This document shows, piece after piece, positions 34,963 to 42,765 of a stretch of 64,000 nt of DNA. Numbering within the stretch: position 1 is the first letter of the stretch; each line of letters opens with the position of its first letter. A model generated the notes under the pieces. The model was not told where the DNA came from, ran no database searches, and saw nothing but the letters and a program-made list of their open reading frames with translations. Location: the sequence record NC_041974.1; one strand, 5' to 3'. A program made the translations under genes and the position numbers.

Positions 34963-35679
34963 ATGTATGGTTTATTAATCCTCGCCTTGCCTCTGTCACC
35001 GTACGTCCACATGAGTGCGATGACTGAGGAACAATTCCAGAAACGCCTCCCGCAATTCATCAAAGACCTGGAAGCCGACATCTTCCCCAACGTCTGTTTC
35101 CAGGGTGCCTTTAACGTCAGCAACACCCGCACGGTCACTCAGCTGTTCATTCCGTGTAACGGCTTGGTGTCAGCACGGGAACTGGCGTATGAACAGATCC
35201 GTAATATTCTTGCTAACCCAGAGAAAGAAGTCCAGCACGTCACCAACATCGGTGATTGGTTAGGTCGTCCGGGTAAGGTGATGTTTGATAATGCGGATGG
35301 GTCTGTGGATGAGGTCGTTGTGACCGACATGTACAAATATCTGGTACACGAGAGAAGAGAGCGTTCTGTCTTTCGGTTCAGTCCGGTTGATCTCAGTATC
35401 ACCGATACCGAACCATTACCAACTCACCTCTACCCGCGTGATCATTTCTACGACCAGGTCTACATCGACAAAGACGGTGAGCGTGCTTTCCTGTCTTACG
35501 GGTCGTGCGGTGAGGAAGGCTGTGCCATAGAGCCGGGCGAAGAGAAGCCCGTGCAAGTGTACGGCGTTACCTACTCGTCACTGGATGAAGCGGCCCGATG
35601 CTATAACCTGCCTGAGCAGTACGTGAAAGAACGCGTTGAATCTGACAGCCTTGAATGGCTGGAGTGGTCATATTTGTAA
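34963..35679 (+). CDS. Homing-endonuclease-derived protein A (NUMOD4/HNH/NUMOD1-like remnants)
   Basis: QGAFNVSNTRTV (NUMOD4-like), VTNIGDWL, C-terminal KPVQVYGVTYSSLDEAAR. Paralog of 39225-40007. Confidence 0.5.
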   Translation: MYGLLILALPLSPYVHMSAMTEEQFQKRLPQFIKDLEADIFPNVCFQGAFNVSNTRTVTQLFIPCNGLVSARELAYEQIRNILANPEKEVQHVTNIGDWLGRPGKVMFDNADGSVDEVVVTDMYKYLVHERRERSVFRFSPVDLSITDTEPLPTHLYPRDHFYDQVYIDKDGERAFLSYGSCGEEGCAIEPGEEKPVQVYGVTYSSLDEAARCYNLPEQYVKERVESDSLEWLEWSYL

Positions 35680-35807
35680 AAGTATTTGGGGATGAGACGC
35701 AGAGCTGATTCCCATCTACGGTAAGTTGTTCAAGGAAGCAGCAAACCGGTTATAAAAAATGAAAGGGTTTTCGTAAGATAGTCAGTGCTCCGTACCCGAG
35801 ACAATAC

Positions 35808-36005
35808 ATGACCACAAACCCGCAGTTTATTTTCGTGGCTCAGAATTCTGATGCTACACACAGCGTAGAGAAACTGGAAGTAGGACGCGATACCGATACC
35901 CAGAAGAACCTCACGGAACTTCGTAAAGGTTTGCCGTTCGACTTCTCGTTTATCATGTCTGAAGAGGCGATCTATCAACTTCGACAGGCAGGGCACATCA
36001 ACTAA
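35808..36005 (+). CDS. Small T5orf172/GIY-YIG-like remnant
   Basis: FIFVAQN...LEVGRDTDTQKNLTELRKGLPF resembles YVY...IKIGxSxxPxxRLxxLxTGxPF without the Tyr/Arg residues. Confidence 0.4.
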   Translation: MTTNPQFIFVAQNSDATHSVEKLEVGRDTDTQKNLTELRKGLPFDFSFIMSEEAIYQLRQAGHIN

Positions 36006-36020
36006 ACTGCTGAGGTAGTC

Positions 36021-36473
36021 ATGACGAACAAATCGGAGATCTCACACGGTGGTGGTGATCAGCCTATGGAAAAAGAGCAAAGCAACTTATCCGTACTGGT
36101 GAACTACTCCACAGGTGTGATGGAAGGTGACCGTTTTAATTACTCGGTTGCATTGGCGCTGTTGAAAGACGGCATCAAAGTGAAACGCGAAGACTGGAAG
36201 AACGCTTTCCTGGTATTCGTCCCGGGTAGTCAGAATGTTGAACTGCCAAAAGGGTCGCCGTATGAAGTCGCACTCCACGGTAAGAAGTCCGTTGCCAATA
36301 TTCGTCCGCACATCGATCTGTACACGGAGTACGGTGAATTCGAAGTCGGTTGGACCGCCAACCAGGAAGACACCAACGCCGATGACTGGATGATTGTCTT
36401 AGACAAGAACACCAATCAAGACGACAGTGCCGACGAAGAGAAAGAGTCTTCACAAGACGACTCGAAGTCATAA
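36021..36473 (+). CDS. tad2: DUF2829 / Tad2-like anti-defence signal-sponge protein
   Basis: FNYSVALALLKDGIKVKREDW...FLVFVPGS...RPHIDLYT...VGWTANQEDTNADDWMIV follows the DUF2829 pattern (FxxALxxLKxGxKVxRxxW...PHID...WxxSQxDxLAxDW). SD GAGGT. Confidence 0.75.
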   Translation: MTNKSEISHGGGDQPMEKEQSNLSVLVNYSTGVMEGDRFNYSVALALLKDGIKVKREDWKNAFLVFVPGSQNVELPKGSPYEVALHGKKSVANIRPHIDLYTEYGEFEVGWTANQEDTNADDWMIVLDKNTNQDDSADEEKESSQDDSKS

Positions 36474-36479
36474 ACTCCA

Positions 36480-36506
36480 GGAGAGCTTCGGCTCTCCTTT
36501 TATGCC
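36480..36506 (+). terminator. Hairpin GGAGAGC-ttcg-GCTCTCC + TTTTATGCCC
   Basis: 7-bp stem with UUCG loop. Confidence 0.8.
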
Positions 36507-36522
36507 CATTAAGGAACATGTC

Positions 36523-36882
36523 ATGAGTGAAAAGAAAGCGTTCGAAGTGGTATTGGATAGCCGTCATGAACCGTACGAGGCTTACCAGTTATTAGTGGCG
36601 CGTATCAATACGTTATTACGCACCGGTCAAGGCTACCATGAAGTGAAACTCACGAAGTGGCAGCTTTACGATAACGGTCTTCTTATCAAAGGAGATGATG
36701 ATGTGCATATCTCCTTGTTGCGTCATTTCTATTACGACGAACAACGCAATACGTTTGGTGGTGGCTTCATGGCCTTTGAGATCCTGGAAGATTTGGGTCG
36801 GTACTACAAAGTGCCCGATATCACAGAAGGGATGGGCGAGAACGTTGGCCTCGTCTTCACGGTCACGGTAACCACACCATAA
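36523..36882 (+). CDS. Paralog array member 1 (hypothetical)
   Basis: SD AAGGA before ATG 36523; motif VKLTKWQLYDNGLLIKGDD. Confidence 0.7.
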   Translation: MSEKKAFEVVLDSRHEPYEAYQLLVARINTLLRTGQGYHEVKLTKWQLYDNGLLIKGDDDVHISLLRHFYYDEQRNTFGGGFMAFEILEDLGRYYKVPDITEGMGENVGLVFTVTVTTP

Positions 36883-36888
36883 GAGGTT

Positions 36889-37257
36889 GTGATGAAACCA
36901 CTCTTCGCCATGAAGTTTGATACCCGGGATGCGGGATTAGGGGATCAACTCGATCTCTTGCAATCACGGGTGAAGGCTTACTCTAAACACGGCACCATGA
37001 TCAAAGATGTGGCGGTGACTGCCTGGGTGGTCTGTTCGGATAACATGCCAGTTGCCGGTGATGACCCTGCTCATGTCAGCATTATCCACCGTTACCGTTA
37101 CGACATCGAACAGCAGTGTGTGGTCGGTGGGGTCAGTGCCATGGATGCTCTGCGTGAGATCTGGTCGGCGTATGGTCCTGACTCTACCCTCCCACCGTTC
37201 AGCCGGATACCCGGTGCTGTCGATATGCAATTTACCTTAACTGTGTTCACTATTTAA
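36889..37257 (+). CDS. Paralog array member 2 (hypothetical)
   Basis: Motif VAVTAWVVCSDNMPVAGDD; SD GAGG. Confidence 0.7.
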   Translation: MMKPLFAMKFDTRDAGLGDQLDLLQSRVKAYSKHGTMIKDVAVTAWVVCSDNMPVAGDDPAHVSIIHRYRYDIEQQCVVGGVSAMDALREIWSAYGPDSTLPPFSRIPGAVDMQFTLTVFTI

Positions 37258-37270
37258 AGGAGATACCCTC

Positions 37271-37660
37271 ATGGGAGTTTCTGCTGCTGCTCGTCGTTCT
37301 AAAGAAGGGGTGTTTACCCGTAGCATTGAAGTGCGTCCAGACCACTGGAAACGGGATATCACTGATTTAGGACTGGATGTCCATAACCTGGTGTTGTGTA
37401 AACAGGAGATCGTGTCAGTGACCGTCACGGCTTGGCGGGCGTATGACGAGTGCGGGGTACTGCGCGGCAGTGCCAAAGAGTTGAAGTTAGACATTACGGA
37501 ATGGTTCCTCGGCGACAAAGGCCCGGTCATTAATGATGCGATCAAACCTCTCACGTTTGCCTTCATCATTAATCAACAACGCAGCCAACGCACGCCCTGG
37601 GTAAAAGATGTCCGCTTAGGGCTTAACCTGTCCATTGTCTACAAGAGGATTCAGCAATAA
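37271..37660 (+). CDS. Paralog array member 3 (hypothetical)
   Basis: Motif VTVTAWRAYDECGVLRGS; SD AGGAG. Confidence 0.7.
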   Translation: MGVSAAARRSKEGVFTRSIEVRPDHWKRDITDLGLDVHNLVLCKQEIVSVTVTAWRAYDECGVLRGSAKELKLDITEWFLGDKGPVINDAIKPLTFAFIINQQRSQRTPWVKDVRLGLNLSIVYKRIQQ

Positions 37661-38004
37661 TGGAAATTGTCCACCAACTCGATCTTAGCCACGGCTGGGA
37701 ACCCTTCAACCGCCTGAAAGCCGCCTTTGCCAAGAAACCCCCGGAGGCAATCTACATCACTGCCTGGGTCGCTCATGGCTATAAAGGAAACCTCATCGGT
37801 GATGAGCAAGTGGTGAAAGGGTCGTGCCAGGAGTGTCGGATTGATGTGACCCACATCTTCTTCCCCAGTCGGCCTGAGATCTTGATTGGTTTGTCGAGCT
37901 TCATTAACACCATTAATCGTGACGGGCCGGTGAAGATCCCGGCCTGGACCGGATCGATTACTCTTTGTCTTGAATTAGCGATAAGTTATACGGATAGAAT
38001 TTAA
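37660..38004 (+). CDS. Paralog array member 4 (hypothetical)
   Basis: Motif IYITAWVAHGYKGNLIGDE; TAATG coupling. Confidence 0.65.
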   Translation: MEIVHQLDLSHGWEPFNRLKAAFAKKPPEAIYITAWVAHGYKGNLIGDEQVVKGSCQECRIDVTHIFFPSRPEILIGLSSFINTINRDGPVKIPAWTGSITLCLELAISYTDRI

Positions 38005-39224: not shown

Positions 39225-40007
39225 ATGGCTATGACGTTCGAAAAAGAAGGGGACACGTTGCACATTGTGCGACTGAGAACCAAAGGCTGGTACCACATGA
39301 CGGTAACCAGCGATCCTGATGCGAGTATGGATATCGTTAACACGAACTTACGTCAGGGCACTTTTACTGATCCACTTTTACAACACCAGTACGACATCTG
39401 TAAAAAAGAGATGGGGCAAGATCCCAATCCAAATGACATCGTTTTCCACCAGTTCGTGACCACGCCAGACCAGACCGGATATCAGTCTGGCCACTGGATG
39501 ATTCGTGATCACATTCGCCACGGCTATTCACTGAAGTGCCTGACTAACATCGGTGACTGGCTTTCGACCGCAGCCTATCTTTATATCCCAGACCCTGATG
39601 ATAAAGAGGGTGGTGAGAGAAAATACAAAGTAACTGACTTAGGCAAGTATCTCGACAAGGAAGAGTTGTTGGGTCACTCCGACCACCTGCCGATGTATTT
39701 CTTGCCTGATGAGGAACCGGGTGACAGCTATGATGAGTTGATTGAAACCCATCGTCTTCCGCAACCTGACAAAGGTTACTCTTGTGTGGCCATCAAGAAC
39801 GGTATGTCGTTTAGTTTGCTGACGTACAACAACTCCAAGCGGGTGCTTTCAGAAGAGGAAGAACTGCAAACCACAACCGTCCCAGTCAGGGCAGATGGTT
39901 TGCTGTACAGCTCCGTCTTAGAGTTGGCTATGGCTAAGAACGCCCCAGTCTGGTTTGTCTTGGAGATGCTAACCTCCGAAACCGACCCAAACTGGCATTT
40001 CGTCTAA
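39225..40007 (+). CDS. Homing-endonuclease-derived protein B
   Basis: IVFHQFVTTPD, LTNIGDWL, YKVTDLGKYL, C-terminal VRADGLLYSSVLELA...DPNWHFV. Paralog of 34963-35679. Confidence 0.5.
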   Translation: MAMTFEKEGDTLHIVRLRTKGWYHMTVTSDPDASMDIVNTNLRQGTFTDPLLQHQYDICKKEMGQDPNPNDIVFHQFVTTPDQTGYQSGHWMIRDHIRHGYSLKCLTNIGDWLSTAAYLYIPDPDDKEGGERKYKVTDLGKYLDKEELLGHSDHLPMYFLPDEEPGDSYDELIETHRLPQPDKGYSCVAIKNGMSFSLLTYNNSKRVLSEEEELQTTTVPVRADGLLYSSVLELAMAKNAPVWFVLEMLTSETDPNWHFV

Positions 40008-41739: not shown

Positions 41740-42243
41740 TTACACTAAAATACCGTTAAAAGCCACCGGGTCATTACCCAGGAACGGGTTGTACCGAACC
41801 ACAGACCCTAATGTGTAATCGTAGTAGATAAAGTCCAAGCATTGCGCACCCTGATAAGTAGTCCATGACTTTGATAGATAGCCATTGCGGTCTAACGCAA
41901 CGTAAGCTGGCCGACTCGATAACGGGGTAAACTTCATCAACACTTGTGGCTGGTTGTTGAGGTTGTTTGTAAATACAGGCAGGGAAGGATGCGCGTGCCT
42001 TGCAATGGAGCACAACCAAGAGTCGTAGGTAAACCACTCTTTATACGACGTGCCGTACATGTTGTTGGATGTGTTCAATGTAGTATTAACATATTTACCG
42101 GCAGTAGCAGACATGCTGGTACTCGCGTTCGCTACCTTCGTATATTTGGCGGCATTGGCCGCAAGCCACGCCTCGAATTGTGCATAGGTCATCTTAGTAC
42201 CTATCTGTGGCTGTGACTTACTGCCCATTAACATCTCTAACAT
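41740..42243 (-). CDS. Putative tail-associated protein, paralog 1
   Basis: Aligns over full length with 42256-42765 (IARHA, RNGY, LDFIYYD, PVxFNGxL). Confidence 0.7.
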   Translation of the reverse strand: MLEMLMGSKSQPQIGTKMTYAQFEAWLAANAAKYTKVANASTSMSATAGKYVNTTLNTSNNMYGTSYKEWFTYDSWLCSIARHAHPSLPVFTNNLNNQPQVLMKFTPLSSRPAYVALDRNGYLSKSWTTYQGAQCLDFIYYDYTLGSVVRYNPFLGNDPVAFNGILV

Positions 42244-42255
42244 GGTAACTCCTGA

Positions 42256-42765
42256 TTAGATCAACACCCCGTTAAACGGTACCGGTGTGCCGCCATTTAA
42301 CGGAGTCCACCGCATCACAACACCCTGGGTATTGTCGTAGTAAATAAAGTCAAGCACAGTACGACCGTTAAATGATCCGTAAGACAAGCTGGTGTAACCG
42401 TTACGATTGAGGCCTGAATAGGCACTTTTGGTAACATAAGGTCCAAGCTTCATTAAACAAAACTGTTTATTCGCCAACATGTAATCAAACATCGTTTGTG
42501 CCGGACACGCATGTCGTGCGATCCTTGCCCAAGTTGAATCGTGAGTACAGGAGTTTAAATAGGGAGTACCCCACATGTTACCGCCATCAGCCGTCATGGA
42601 GATCCTGGCATAGCCGTTCGTAAACGTGGTGGACGAAGGGGTGCCTGTATTCGACGCTGCACTGACCGCACTGTACTTAGTGGTATTGGTATTTAACCAA
42701 GTAACAAAATCCGCATAGCTCATCTTTACAGTTTTCTTGCCAGCGTACATTAATAACTCGAGCAT
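42256..42765 (-). CDS. Putative tail-associated protein, paralog 2
   Basis: See paralog 1; SD GAGGTGG. Confidence 0.7.
   Translation of the reverse strand: MLELLMYAGKKTVKMSYADFVTWLNTNTTKYSAVSAASNTGTPSSTTFTNGYARISMTADGGNMWGTPYLNSCTHDSTWARIARHACPAQTMFDYMLANKQFCLMKLGPYVTKSAYSGLNRNGYTSLSYGSFNGRTVLDFIYYDNTQGVVMRWTPLNGGTPVPFNGVLI

What the first reader, a model, noticed from the sequence alone, without database searches (positions are those of the whole stretch)
36021..36473. Tad2/DUF2829-like immune-signal sponge in a nucleus-forming phage
Seen: a core of about 90 aa matching the DUF2829 pattern (ALALLKDGIKVKREDW...RPHIDL...WTANQEDTNADDW), with acidic extensions at both ends and its own terminator. 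Established: Tad2 proteins are DUF2829 members that sequester Thoeris gcADPR, and some also bind cyclic dinucleotides. The phage nucleus shields DNA from nucleases but not from small-molecule abortive-infection signalling. Inference: this gene covers that gap. Substitutions in the conserved tail (NQED-TN-ADDW versus the usual SQxD-xL-AxDW) might shift ligand specificity.
Basis: partly seen in the sequence, partly recalled or inferred. Interest (0 to 1): 0.75.

Follow-up and report, generated by a model that had tools for sequence, protein, structure and literature searches.

The report
Tad2-like gene in Erwinia jumbo phage
A small, expressed gene of a nucleus-forming Erwinia phage belongs to the Tad2 family, whose members soak up bacterial alarm molecules, but its binding pocket is altered, so the molecule it captures, if any, is unknown.

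Summary
Window 36021-36473 (+) is a real 150-aa gene: gp278 of Erwinia phage vB_EamM_Simmy50, a chimallin-encoding Agricanvirus. Residues 38-127 match Pfam PF11195 (Tad2-like/DUF2829) at E 4.5e-14. The predicted fold matches only solved Tad2 structures (TM up to 0.89). Both ends are acidic, and a conserved hairpin follows the stop codon. The orthologue RAY gp273 was detected by mass spectrometry in a phage lysate.

The family call is not new. UniProt already names this protein 'Thoeris anti-defense 2-like domain-containing protein'.

The gcADPR-sponge reading is only partly supported. Both ligand-sandwiching Trp and the key Asp are kept. The turn that supplies the phosphate-binding Asn-Gly is two residues shorter. 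The Ser and Thr positions are Asn and Glu. The insertion is too short for the known cyclic-dinucleotide pocket.

Within the Erwinia jumbo-phage clade almost all radical substitutions fall in these pocket segments. The rest of the protein is under strong purifying selection.

Thoeris is not mentioned in the main text of a 317-genome E. amylovora survey. PhiKZ Tad1 already shows that a nucleus-forming phage can carry a signal sponge.

Verdict: a new, divergent member of a known family, probably a sponge of undetermined specificity. Interest is moderate.

The parts
36021..36473 (+). Gene gp278 (FDH99_gp248), 150 aa including stop: Tad2-like/DUF2829 protein
   Evidence: ORF list. RefSeq annotation. 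Pfam PF11195 E 4.5e-14. PHROG 1048 E 2e-47. The orthologue RAY gp273 was detected by LC-MS/MS (PMC6690015).
36012..36015 (+). GAGG ribosome-binding site, 5 nt before the ATG
   Evidence: Read from the sequence. Invariant in Simmy50, Ea35-70, RAY, Mortimer and AH06.
36021..36131 (+). N-terminal extension, residues 1-37: predicted disordered, clade-specific, strongly conserved
   Evidence: pLDDT 51-57. 34 of 37 residues are invariant in the clade. dN/dS is 0.05-0.08. Only one 50%-identity cluster in 1.84 billion representatives shares it. No alignable similarity to the N-terminal domains of other relatives.
36132..36401 (+). Tad2/DUF2829 core, residues 38-127 (helix 1, beta-sheet, short helices 2 and 3)
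   Evidence: Pfam envelope 40-126. AF2 pLDDT 85-98. The top 24 Foldseek PDB hits are all Tad2 structures, with target-normalised TM up to 0.89. The family profile hits solved Tad2 chains at E 6e-30 to 8e-22.
36195..36203 (+). Shortened beta1-beta2 turn, W59-K60-N61 (pocket wall). It is two residues shorter than in most relatives and lacks the Asn-Gly pair.
   Evidence: Alignments to SPO1, Spt and Mod Tad2. Column counts in 152 relatives. Pocket residues from 10.1101/2023.05.01.538930 and PMC10680739.
36351..36389 (+). Pocket helix segment W111-W123. W111, Q115, D117, A120, D122 and W123 are kept. N114, E116, T118 and N119 are atypical and variable within the clade.
36402..36470 (+). Acidic C-terminal tail, residues 128-150 (net -6). 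Its sequence and length vary between relatives but it is always acidic.
36479..36505 (+). Hairpin (8-bp stem, UUCG loop) plus TTTATGC tail: terminator-like element between gp278 and gp279
35808..36005 (+). gp277, 65 aa, function unknown. It lies 15 bp upstream and is always syntenic with the Tad2-like gene. It is probably co-transcribed and may be a partner.

Best explanation
gp278 is a divergent member of the Tad2 (DUF2829) family. It is made during infection by an Erwinia chimallivirus and most likely acts in the host cytoplasm as a small-molecule sponge. By analogy with solved Tad2 proteins it would assemble into a homotetramer whose inter-protomer pockets enclose a nucleotide-derived immune signal, so the host effector is never switched on. 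Its pocket has been remodelled: a shorter beta1-beta2 turn without the Asn-Gly pair, Asn and Glu in place of the usual Ser and Thr, and polar residues in place of two hydrophobic helix positions. The ligand is therefore probably not bound in the way SPO1 Tad2 binds 3'cADPR, and it may be a different ADPR-derived or other nucleotide signal.

Shown: the gene, family, fold, expression of the orthologue, purifying selection, and pocket differences.

Inferred: tetramer formation, sponge activity, cytoplasmic site of action, and the identity of the ligand.
For: Family and fold:
- Pfam match above the gathering threshold.
- The family profile hits all solved Tad2 chains.
- AF2 core pLDDT is 85-98, and the top 24 Foldseek PDB hits are exclusively Tad2. 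The best is ModTad2, TM 0.89, rmsd 1.2-1.3 A.

Scaffold of the pocket:
- The near-invariant family columns are all kept: R56, W59, H97, D99, W111, Q115, D117, D122, W123.
- These include the counterparts of SPO1 W25, W73 and D79, which carry most ligand contacts.

Functional constraint:
- dN/dS is 0.13 against AH06 over the whole gene, and 0.02-0.05 in the core outside the pocket.
- The RAY orthologue was detected by LC-MS/MS.

Pocket-focused change:
- 8 of 11 pocket-segment positions vary in the clade against 8 of 79 elsewhere in the core (Fisher p 2e-5).
- dN is 0.33-0.62 in the pocket segments against 0.02-0.04 elsewhere. This is what changing ligand specificity would look like.

Family precedent:
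- Tad2 proteins bind 3'cADPR/2'cADPR, His-ADPR, N7-cADPR, cUMP/cCMP and cyclic dinucleotides.
- PhiKZ, another chimallivirus, carries the sponge Tad1.
Against: - No binding or oligomer data exist for this protein, and only a monomer could be modelled.
- The Asn-Gly pair that contacts the phosphates is absent, and Ser76/Thr78 are replaced.
- Hydrophobic helix positions are polar here. Hydrophobic residues occupy the T118 column in 147 of 152 relatives, and Leu occupies the N119 column in 116 of 152. This could disturb the protomer interface.
- High dN in the pocket helix could equally mean relaxed constraint. dS is saturated, so positive selection is not shown. The segments were defined from published pockets, but after the alignment had been seen.
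- Thoeris does not appear in the main text of a 317-genome E. amylovora survey.
- 19 of 84 sponge homologues tested by Hadary et al. inhibited none of seven systems.
- The conserved N-terminal 37 residues have no place in the sponge model.
Confidence: 0.45

Rival explanations
1. Canonical reading. The protein binds 3'cADPR/2'cADPR (gcADPR) in the same pocket as SPO1 Tad2 and blocks type I Thoeris. The substitutions are tolerated.
For: Both Trp and the Asp of the gcADPR pocket are conserved. The Thr78 column is naturally variable in the family: Thr 57, Ala 32, Ser 23, Glu 14 of 152. Some Tad2 proteins are broad inhibitors: Tad2_71 inhibits Thoeris types I, II and IV. Li et al. judged only about 1% of short Tad2 proteins non-functional for gcADPR.
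Against: The turn is two residues shorter and lacks the Asn-Gly pair, which is present in about 75% of relatives and contacts the phosphates from both protomers. Ser76 is Asn here (Ser in 120 of 152). The nearest non-clade relatives keep the usual turn, so this is a derived change. Thoeris is not mentioned in the main text of the E. amylovora pangenome survey.
Confidence: 0.2
2. Non-sponge role. The DUF2829 fold is kept as a scaffold, and the protein works through its conserved N-terminal segment and acidic tail. It could, for example, bind a host or phage protein, or be a packaged or early-delivered factor.
For: The N-terminal 37 residues are clade-specific and as constrained as the core (dN/dS 0.05-0.08). 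The pocket positions are the least constrained part. The tail is always acidic although its sequence varies. The protein appeared in a lysate proteome dominated by virion proteins. It is always paired with gp277. PhiKZ Tad1 is reported to be injected with the phage.
Against: No DUF2829 protein has a demonstrated non-sponge function. The AcrIIA7 anti-CRISPR activity could not be reproduced. The ligand-sandwiching Trp residues and the Asp remain invariant in the clade, which is hard to explain without a ligand. The proteome came from a crude lysate, so it says nothing about packaging.
Confidence: 0.25
3. A decaying or neutral accessory gene with no current function.
For: It is an accessory gene found only in Agricanvirus-like phages among chimalliviruses. 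Its pocket is altered.
Against: The reading frame is intact in every orthologue. dN/dS is 0.13 overall at dS 0.65 against AH06. The ribosome-binding site and hairpin are conserved. The protein is detected.
Confidence: 0.04

Closest known systems
ModTad2 / MoTad2 (Myroides odoratus prophage Tad2; PDB 8v3e, 9eib)
   Same: It is the best structural match: target-normalised TM 0.81-0.89, rmsd 1.2-2.4 A, 30-32% identity. Sequence E-value is 3e-5. It has the same helix-sheet-helix core, a short insertion, and Pro at the position after the second Trp, as some clade members have.
   Different: ModTad2 has the full-length turn with Asn-Gly and has no N- or C-terminal extensions (87-89 aa). [quoted passage not shown] Neither has been tested for gp278.
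SPO1 Tad2 (Gp34.65; PDB 8sme/8smf/8smg), founder of the family
   Same: Same fold (TM 0.65-0.81). The insertion length is similar, 24 against 25-26 residues. The W25, W73 and D79 counterparts are conserved.
   Different: Pairwise sequence similarity is marginal (E 0.36). The N26/G27 turn residues are absent in gp278, S76 is Asn, T78 is Glu, and H71 and D67 are not matched in the alignment. SPO1 Tad2 is 89 aa with no extensions.
SptTad2 and HgmTad2/AcrIIA7 (PDB 8wjd, 8kbi-8kbm)
   Same: SptTad2 is the best pairwise sequence hit (E 1.1e-5). Same fold (TM 0.67-0.73).
   Different: They carry a 35-41-residue insertion that forms the cyclic-dinucleotide pocket, whereas gp278 has 25-26 residues. Their gcADPR pocket uses W21/N22/G23 and S90/T92/D93.
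Tad1 of phiKZ and of phage Ahti (sponge carried by other chimalliviruses)
   Same: Same proposed biological role in the same kind of phage: a cytoplasmic signal sponge that complements the DNA-shielding nucleus.
   Different: It is an unrelated fold and a hexamer. No sequence or structural similarity was found, or expected.
Short-turn DUF2829 proteins from metagenomes (for example P0129, P0039, P0034, P0012)
   Same: They also have a turn of 4-5 residues from the Trp to the next aromatic residue (18 of 152 relatives). They often have Pro/Thr/Asn/Glu at the helix positions where gp278 is atypical.
   Different: They share only 30-45% identity with gp278, lack its N-terminal segment, and have not been characterised. 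The nearest relatives of the Erwinia clade have the usual turn, so the shortening probably arose independently.

Membership tests
Pfam PF11195 Tad2-like (DUF2829) | Match to the family HMM above the curated gathering score | tested here: met
   53.2 bits against a cut-off of 25, E 4.5e-14, profile positions 2-73 of 73.
Pfam PF11195 Tad2-like (DUF2829) | Tad2 fold: N-terminal helix, antiparallel sheet, two short helices in the loops | tested here: met
   AF2 secondary-structure elements H41-49, E54-56, E63-67, E70-74, H80-84, E91-94, E97-101, H115-119, E123-125, with core pLDDT 85-98. The top 24 PDB matches are all Tad2.
Pfam PF11195 Tad2-like (DUF2829) | Near-invariant family columns retained | tested here: met
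   R56, W59, H97, D99, W111, Q115, D117, D122 and W123 each match the residue held by 136-152 of 152 relatives.
Functional Tad2 (gcADPR sponge) | Two Trp that pack against the ligand (SPO1 W25, W73) and the Asp that binds the ribose hydroxyls (D79) | tested here: met
   W59, W111 and D117 by alignment.
Functional Tad2 (gcADPR sponge) | Asn-Gly after the first Trp, contacting the diphosphate (SPO1 N26; HgmTad2 N22/G23) | tested here: not met
   The turn is two residues shorter, reading W59-K60-N61-A62. Relatives have Asn in 116 and Gly in 114 of 152 at these columns. A full-length turn occurs in 116 of 152 and a short one in 18 of 152.
Functional Tad2 (gcADPR sponge) | Ser and Thr of the pocket helix (SPO1 S76, T78; HgmTad2 S90, T92) | tested here: not met
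   N114 stands where Ser occurs in 120 of 152. E116 stands where the column reads Thr 57, Ala 32, Ser 23, Glu 14 of 152.
Functional Tad2 (gcADPR sponge) | Homotetramer with two inter-protomer pockets | not testable with these tools
   The structure tool predicts single chains only.
Functional Tad2 (gcADPR sponge) | Binds gcADPR and prevents effector activation | not testable with these tools
   No biochemical data exist for this protein or its orthologues in the papers searched.
CDN-binding Tad2 (HgmTad2/SptTad2 type) | Insertion of 35-41 residues between beta2 and beta5 that forms the cyclic-dinucleotide pocket | tested here: not met
   The insertion is 25-26 residues. Among 152 relatives the median is 25, and 2 reach 35 or more. 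The criterion comes from PMC10680739.
AcrIIA7 anti-CRISPR | Inhibition of type II-A Cas9 | not tested
   It is the same domain family. Li et al. could not reproduce the activity. The survey lists type I-E, not type II, as the CRISPR system of E. amylovora.
Chimalliviridae (nucleus-forming phages): the genome that carries the gene | Encodes chimallin and split multisubunit RNA polymerases. Nucleus seen by microscopy. | tested here: met
   Simmy50 gp227 matches phiPA3 PhuN at E 1.4e-31 and chimallin at 3.8e-24. RNAP beta fragments gp253, gp254 and gp275 lie in the window. The nucleus was shown for sister phage RAY only, by literature and not for Simmy50 itself.

The most novel reading that the evidence does not exclude
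The Erwinia jumbo-phage clade has re-tooled the Tad2 pocket (shortened turn, polar helix face, fast-evolving specificity positions) to capture an immune signal that is not among those known so far. The signal would be produced by a defence system of Erwinia or Pantoea that has not yet been characterised. The conserved N-terminal segment, perhaps together with gp277, would add a second activity. The protein would then be a handle for finding a new signalling molecule, as Tad1 and ModTad2 were for 3'cADPR and His-ADPR.
Probability: 0.15. Interest if true: 0.7.

Novelty: new member of a known kind. Interest (0 to 1): 0.35.

Why it matters
Nucleus-forming phages are shielded from DNA-targeting defences. 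Their remaining weak points are RNA-targeting defences and those that work through small-molecule signals. A 2026 review states that Tad1 of phiKZ is the only anti-defence protein described in jumbo phages (PMC13282480). A second, unrelated sponge family in a different chimallivirus genus would show that signal sequestration is a recurrent complement to the nucleus.

These phages infect the fire-blight pathogen and are considered for biocontrol, so knowing which host defences they can neutralise bears on their reliability.

The altered, fast-evolving pocket, together with the lack of a reported Thoeris system in E. amylovora, leaves the target open. That is the only part with real discovery potential. 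The family assignment itself is routine and already in UniProt.

Tried and rejected
- PADLOC scan of the protein: no hit. This was expected, because the library holds defence models, not anti-defence models.
- Consensus terminator scan: it did not flag the hairpin. Folding, my own hairpin scan and the orthologue alignment were used instead.
- Idea that gp277 is the missing N-terminal part of a longer PHROG 1048-type protein, because the profile is 211 positions long and gp278 matches positions 66-210. Rejected: gp277 fully matches its own 65-position family, PHROG 11788, and a stop codon plus a ribosome-binding site separate the two genes in every genome.
- Idea that the N-terminal 37 residues are a remnant of the N-terminal domains fused to many relatives. 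No alignable similarity was found.
- Paralogue of the Tad2 core elsewhere in the window: none (tblastn).
- Recent horizontal acquisition judged by composition: gene GC is 0.490 against 0.497 for the window, so there is no signal.
- Other chimalliviruses carrying a homologue: tblastn against 50,697 phage records gave 96 records. None of the 60 records listed outside the Agricanvirus group was recognisable as a chimallivirus; 36 records were not listed. The large Vibrio hits look T4-like from the one context checked (F86).
- Anti-CRISPR (AcrIIA7) reading: set aside, because the published activity was not reproducible.
- Supplement look-ups: the supplements of Hadary et al. are not held, and the supplement of Sharma et al. 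holds no gp273 peptide data. I could not check whether any experimentally tested Tad2 has the short turn.
- The TIR-systems preprint (10.64898/2025.12.03.692087) has no Tad2, Erwinia or Pantoea text in its main body.

Full report
**What the window is.** Window 35000-38000 is 100% identical to Erwinia phage vB_EamM_Simmy50 (NC_041974.1, 271 kb, genus Agricanvirus). Window position equals record position minus 186000. Fifteen further records of sister phages are 93-99.7% identical over the full 3 kb, and AH06 matches 23% of it at 87%. The finding's ORF is gp278 (YP_009606061.1), annotated 'hypothetical protein'. Simmy50 gp227, 2.3 kb upstream of the window, is annotated 'nuclear shell protein'. 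It matches phiPA3 PhuN at E 1.4e-31 and chimallin at 3.8e-24. The window holds three RNA-polymerase beta fragments. Sister phage RAY was shown by microscopy and tomography to build a phage nucleus (PMC10299810). 'Nucleus-forming phage' is therefore justified, by homology for Simmy50 itself.

**The observation.**
- The 150-aa ORF at 36021-36473 is real and has a GAGG ribosome-binding site 5 nt upstream.
- Residues 40-126 match Pfam PF11195 'Tad2-like' at E 4.5e-14, 53.2 bits against a cut-off of 25, over the whole profile.
- PHROG 1048 matches at E 2e-47.
- Pairwise searches of solved structures find SptTad2 (1.1e-5), ModTad2 (3e-5) and Tad2 8v3e (3.4e-5). SPO1 Tad2 and HgmTad2/AcrIIA7 are marginal.
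- A profile of 130 relatives hits all of these at E 6e-30 to 8e-22.
- An AlphaFold2 model has mean pLDDT 82.9, with the core (about 31-130) at 85-98 and both ends low.
- Its top 24 Foldseek matches in the PDB are all Tad2 structures. The best is ModTad2, target-normalised TM 0.89, rmsd 1.2-1.3 A. Nothing significant follows.
- Both ends are acidic: net -4 for residues 1-37 and -6 for residues 128-150, with pI 4.5 overall.
- The hairpin after the stop (36479-36498, UUCG loop, then TTTAT) lies in a stretch that folds well below all shuffles. It is invariant across orthologues apart from one wobble-compatible change in AH06.
- Similar hairpins are frequent in the window, 16 on the + strand and 8 on the - strand. 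It is normal punctuation, not a special feature of this gene.

**Is the gene used?** RAY gp273 is the orthologue and is 100% identical over residues 1-132. Table 3 of Sharma et al. 2019 lists it among proteins detected by LC-MS/MS of a crude RAY lysate, retrieval number 68, 18.7% coverage (PMC6690015). Against the more distant AH06 the gene shows dN/dS 0.13 at dS 0.65. Among the E. amylovora Agricanviruses the gp277-gp278 pair has very low synonymous divergence (0-0.055). Its neighbours reach 0.38 (gp276) and 1.2 (gp280), a mosaic pattern. The 100% protein identity there therefore reflects low divergence of the locus as well as constraint.

**Distribution.**
- HMMER against 1.84 billion representatives found 324 proteins at E <= 1e-3. 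Only one 50%-identity cluster (P0002) matches the full length, including residues 1-37. All others share the core only, and 84 of 153 carry unrelated N-terminal extensions of 30 residues or more.
- P0002 sits in a 288-kb contig with the same gene order: RNAP beta, a 216-aa gene, a 65-aa gene, the Tad2-like gene.
- tblastn against 50,697 phage records found 96 records. None of the 60 records listed outside the Agricanvirus group was recognisable as a chimallivirus, and 36 records were not listed. The large Vibrio genomes look T4-like from the one context checked (F86).
- The gene is thus an accessory gene of one chimallivirus genus, not part of the chimallivirus core.

**The pocket.** Published structures give the ligand contacts.
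- In SPO1 Tad2 these are W25, N26, I63, T65, D67, H71, W73, S76, T78 and D79 (10.1101/2023.05.01.538930).
- In HgmTad2 they are W21, N22, G23, W87, L88, S90, T92 and D93. The W21A/N22A and S90A/T92A/D93A mutants lose binding (PMC10680739).

Mapping through the alignments and a 153-sequence alignment gives the following.

| Reference position | gp278 | Residue counts in 152 relatives |
|---|---|---|
| SPO1 W25 | W59 | Trp 151 |
| SPO1 W73 | W111 | Trp 151 |
| SPO1 D79 | D117 | Asp 152 |
| other near-invariant columns | R56, H97, D99, Q115, D122, W123 | same residue in 136-151 |
| column after first Trp (SPO1 N26) | K60 | Asn 116 |
| next column (SPO1 G27) | N61 | Gly 114 |
| SPO1 S76 | N114 | Ser 120 |
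| SPO1 T78 | E116 | Thr 57, Ala 32, Ser 23, Glu 14 |
| helix position | T118 | hydrophobic 147 |
| helix position | N119 | Leu 116 |

- The stretch from the first Trp to the next aromatic residue is two residues shorter than usual. It is 7 residues long in 116 of 152 relatives, and 4-5 residues long in 18, gp278's own clade among them.
- The nearest relatives outside the clade have the usual turn, so the shortening is derived.
- The insertion between beta2 and beta5 is 25-26 residues. That is like SPO1 Tad2 (24) and unlike the 35-41 residues that make the cyclic-dinucleotide pocket of HgmTad2 and SptTad2.

**Where the clade varies.** Four distinct sequences were compared: the Simmy50 type, AH06, P0002 and P0004.
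- 8 of the 11 positions in the two pocket segments (residue 60 and residues 112-121) vary, and all of these changes are radical.
- 8 of the other 79 core positions vary, and all of these changes are conservative.
- 3 of the 37 N-terminal positions vary. Fisher p for pocket against the rest of the core is 2e-5.
- dN is 0.33-0.62 in the pocket segments against 0.02-0.04 in the rest of the core. dN/dS is 0.02-0.05 in the rest of the core and 0.05-0.08 in the N-terminal segment.
- dS is saturated, so positive selection is not demonstrated.
- The segments were taken from published pockets, but only after I had seen the alignment.

**Interpretation.** The family is well established as signal sponges with varied specificity: 3'cADPR and 2'cADPR, His-ADPR, N7-cADPR, cUMP/cCMP and cyclic dinucleotides, sometimes in two separate pockets. 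About a quarter of tested sponge homologues inhibited none of seven systems.

gp278 keeps the scaffold and the three most important pocket residues. It has lost or changed the phosphate-binding turn and the specificity positions, and these are exactly the positions that change within its clade. I therefore rank the explanations as follows.

| Explanation | Confidence |
|---|---|
| Tad2-type sponge with non-canonical, undetermined specificity | 0.45 |
| Non-sponge role built on the conserved N-terminal segment and acidic tail | 0.25 |
| Canonical gcADPR sponge | 0.20 |
| Neutral remnant | 0.04 |

The main text of a 317-genome E. amylovora survey mentions CBASS type I, Pycsar and Lamassu-Cap4 and never mentions Thoeris. 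Its phage anti-defence list does not mention tad2 (PMC13480210). These phages also plate on Pantoea, and AH06 infects E. billingiae, so the relevant host range is wider than E. amylovora.

**Novelty.**
- UniProt already names the Simmy50 protein (A0A173GDK2) 'Thoeris anti-defense 2-like domain-containing protein'. The Ea35-70 GenBank record already notes DUF2829. The family call is not new.
- Sponges in chimalliviruses are known: Tad1 in phiKZ and Ahti. The 2026 review says Tad1 is the only anti-defence protein described in jumbo phages.
- None of the 12 papers listed (of 64 matching) in a search for papers linking Tad2/DUF2829 to nucleus-forming phages contains either term.
- This is a new, divergent member of a known kind.

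- In notebook entry 2 I wrote an eight-residue majority motif for the family's turn. I noted the slip, deleted nothing, and give only counts here.
- No gene in or near the finding is broken.
- No repaired, consensus or ancestral sequence was built.

Noticed in passing
window 35808-36005 (+): gp277 is a 65-aa protein of unknown function, 15 bp upstream of the Tad2-like gene. It is syntenic with that gene in every Agricanvirus-like genome, including AH06 and a 288-kb metagenomic contig. Its last 23 residues are invariant. It matches only PHROG 11788, with no Pfam or PDB hit. It may be a functional partner.
   Followed up: partly
window 34963-35679 and 39231-40007 (+): gp276 and gp285 are paralogues (29% identity over 154 aa) that flank the block of small accessory genes gp277-gp284. 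gp276 has a sub-threshold match to the I-TevI DNA-binding domain (E 0.0045). It is extremely divergent between phages (dN above 1 against AH06). It may derive from a homing endonuclease.
   Followed up: no
window 36523-38004 (+) and 41740-42765 (-): Arrays of duplicated small genes: gp279/gp280 (27% identity, both PHROG 6658), gp281/gp282 (26%) and gp287/gp288 (41%). gp280 has dS 1.2 between Simmy50 and Ea35-70 but 0.08 between Simmy50 and RAY, which indicates recombination mosaicism.
   Followed up: partly
window 35808-36473: The gp277-gp278 pair has near-zero synonymous divergence among the E. amylovora Agricanviruses (dS 0-0.055). The flanking genes reach 0.38 and 1.2. This looks like a recently shared or swept segment.
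   Followed up: partly
window + strand 3485, 10307, 21696, 26708, 29563, 36479, 41697; - strand 41718, 9105: GC-rich hairpins followed at once by T(T)TATG recur in intergenic regions. PhiKZ late promoters have a TATG motif whose G is the start site (PMC4666361). These could therefore be combined terminator and late-promoter modules. Two of them sit between convergent genes, so the motif may simply be the U-tract.
   Followed up: partly
BFVD entry A0A223LII1 (Erwinia phage vB_EamM_RisingSun), not in the window: A 123-aa protein annotated 'putative thymidylate kinase' gives a weak structural match to the gp278 model (E 3e-3, target-normalised TM 0.49). It may be a second Erwinia jumbo phage with a Tad2-like fold. 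The annotation looks doubtful.
   Followed up: no
L010 (Pectobacterium phage Momine) 3001-3276: The closest phage homologue outside the clade (42% identity) is a 91-aa Tad2-like gene in a 43-kb Autographiviridae phage. It lies just before a large gene annotated 'diguanylate cyclase/phosphodiesterase'. This is an odd neighbour for a family in which some members bind c-di-GMP.
   Followed up: no
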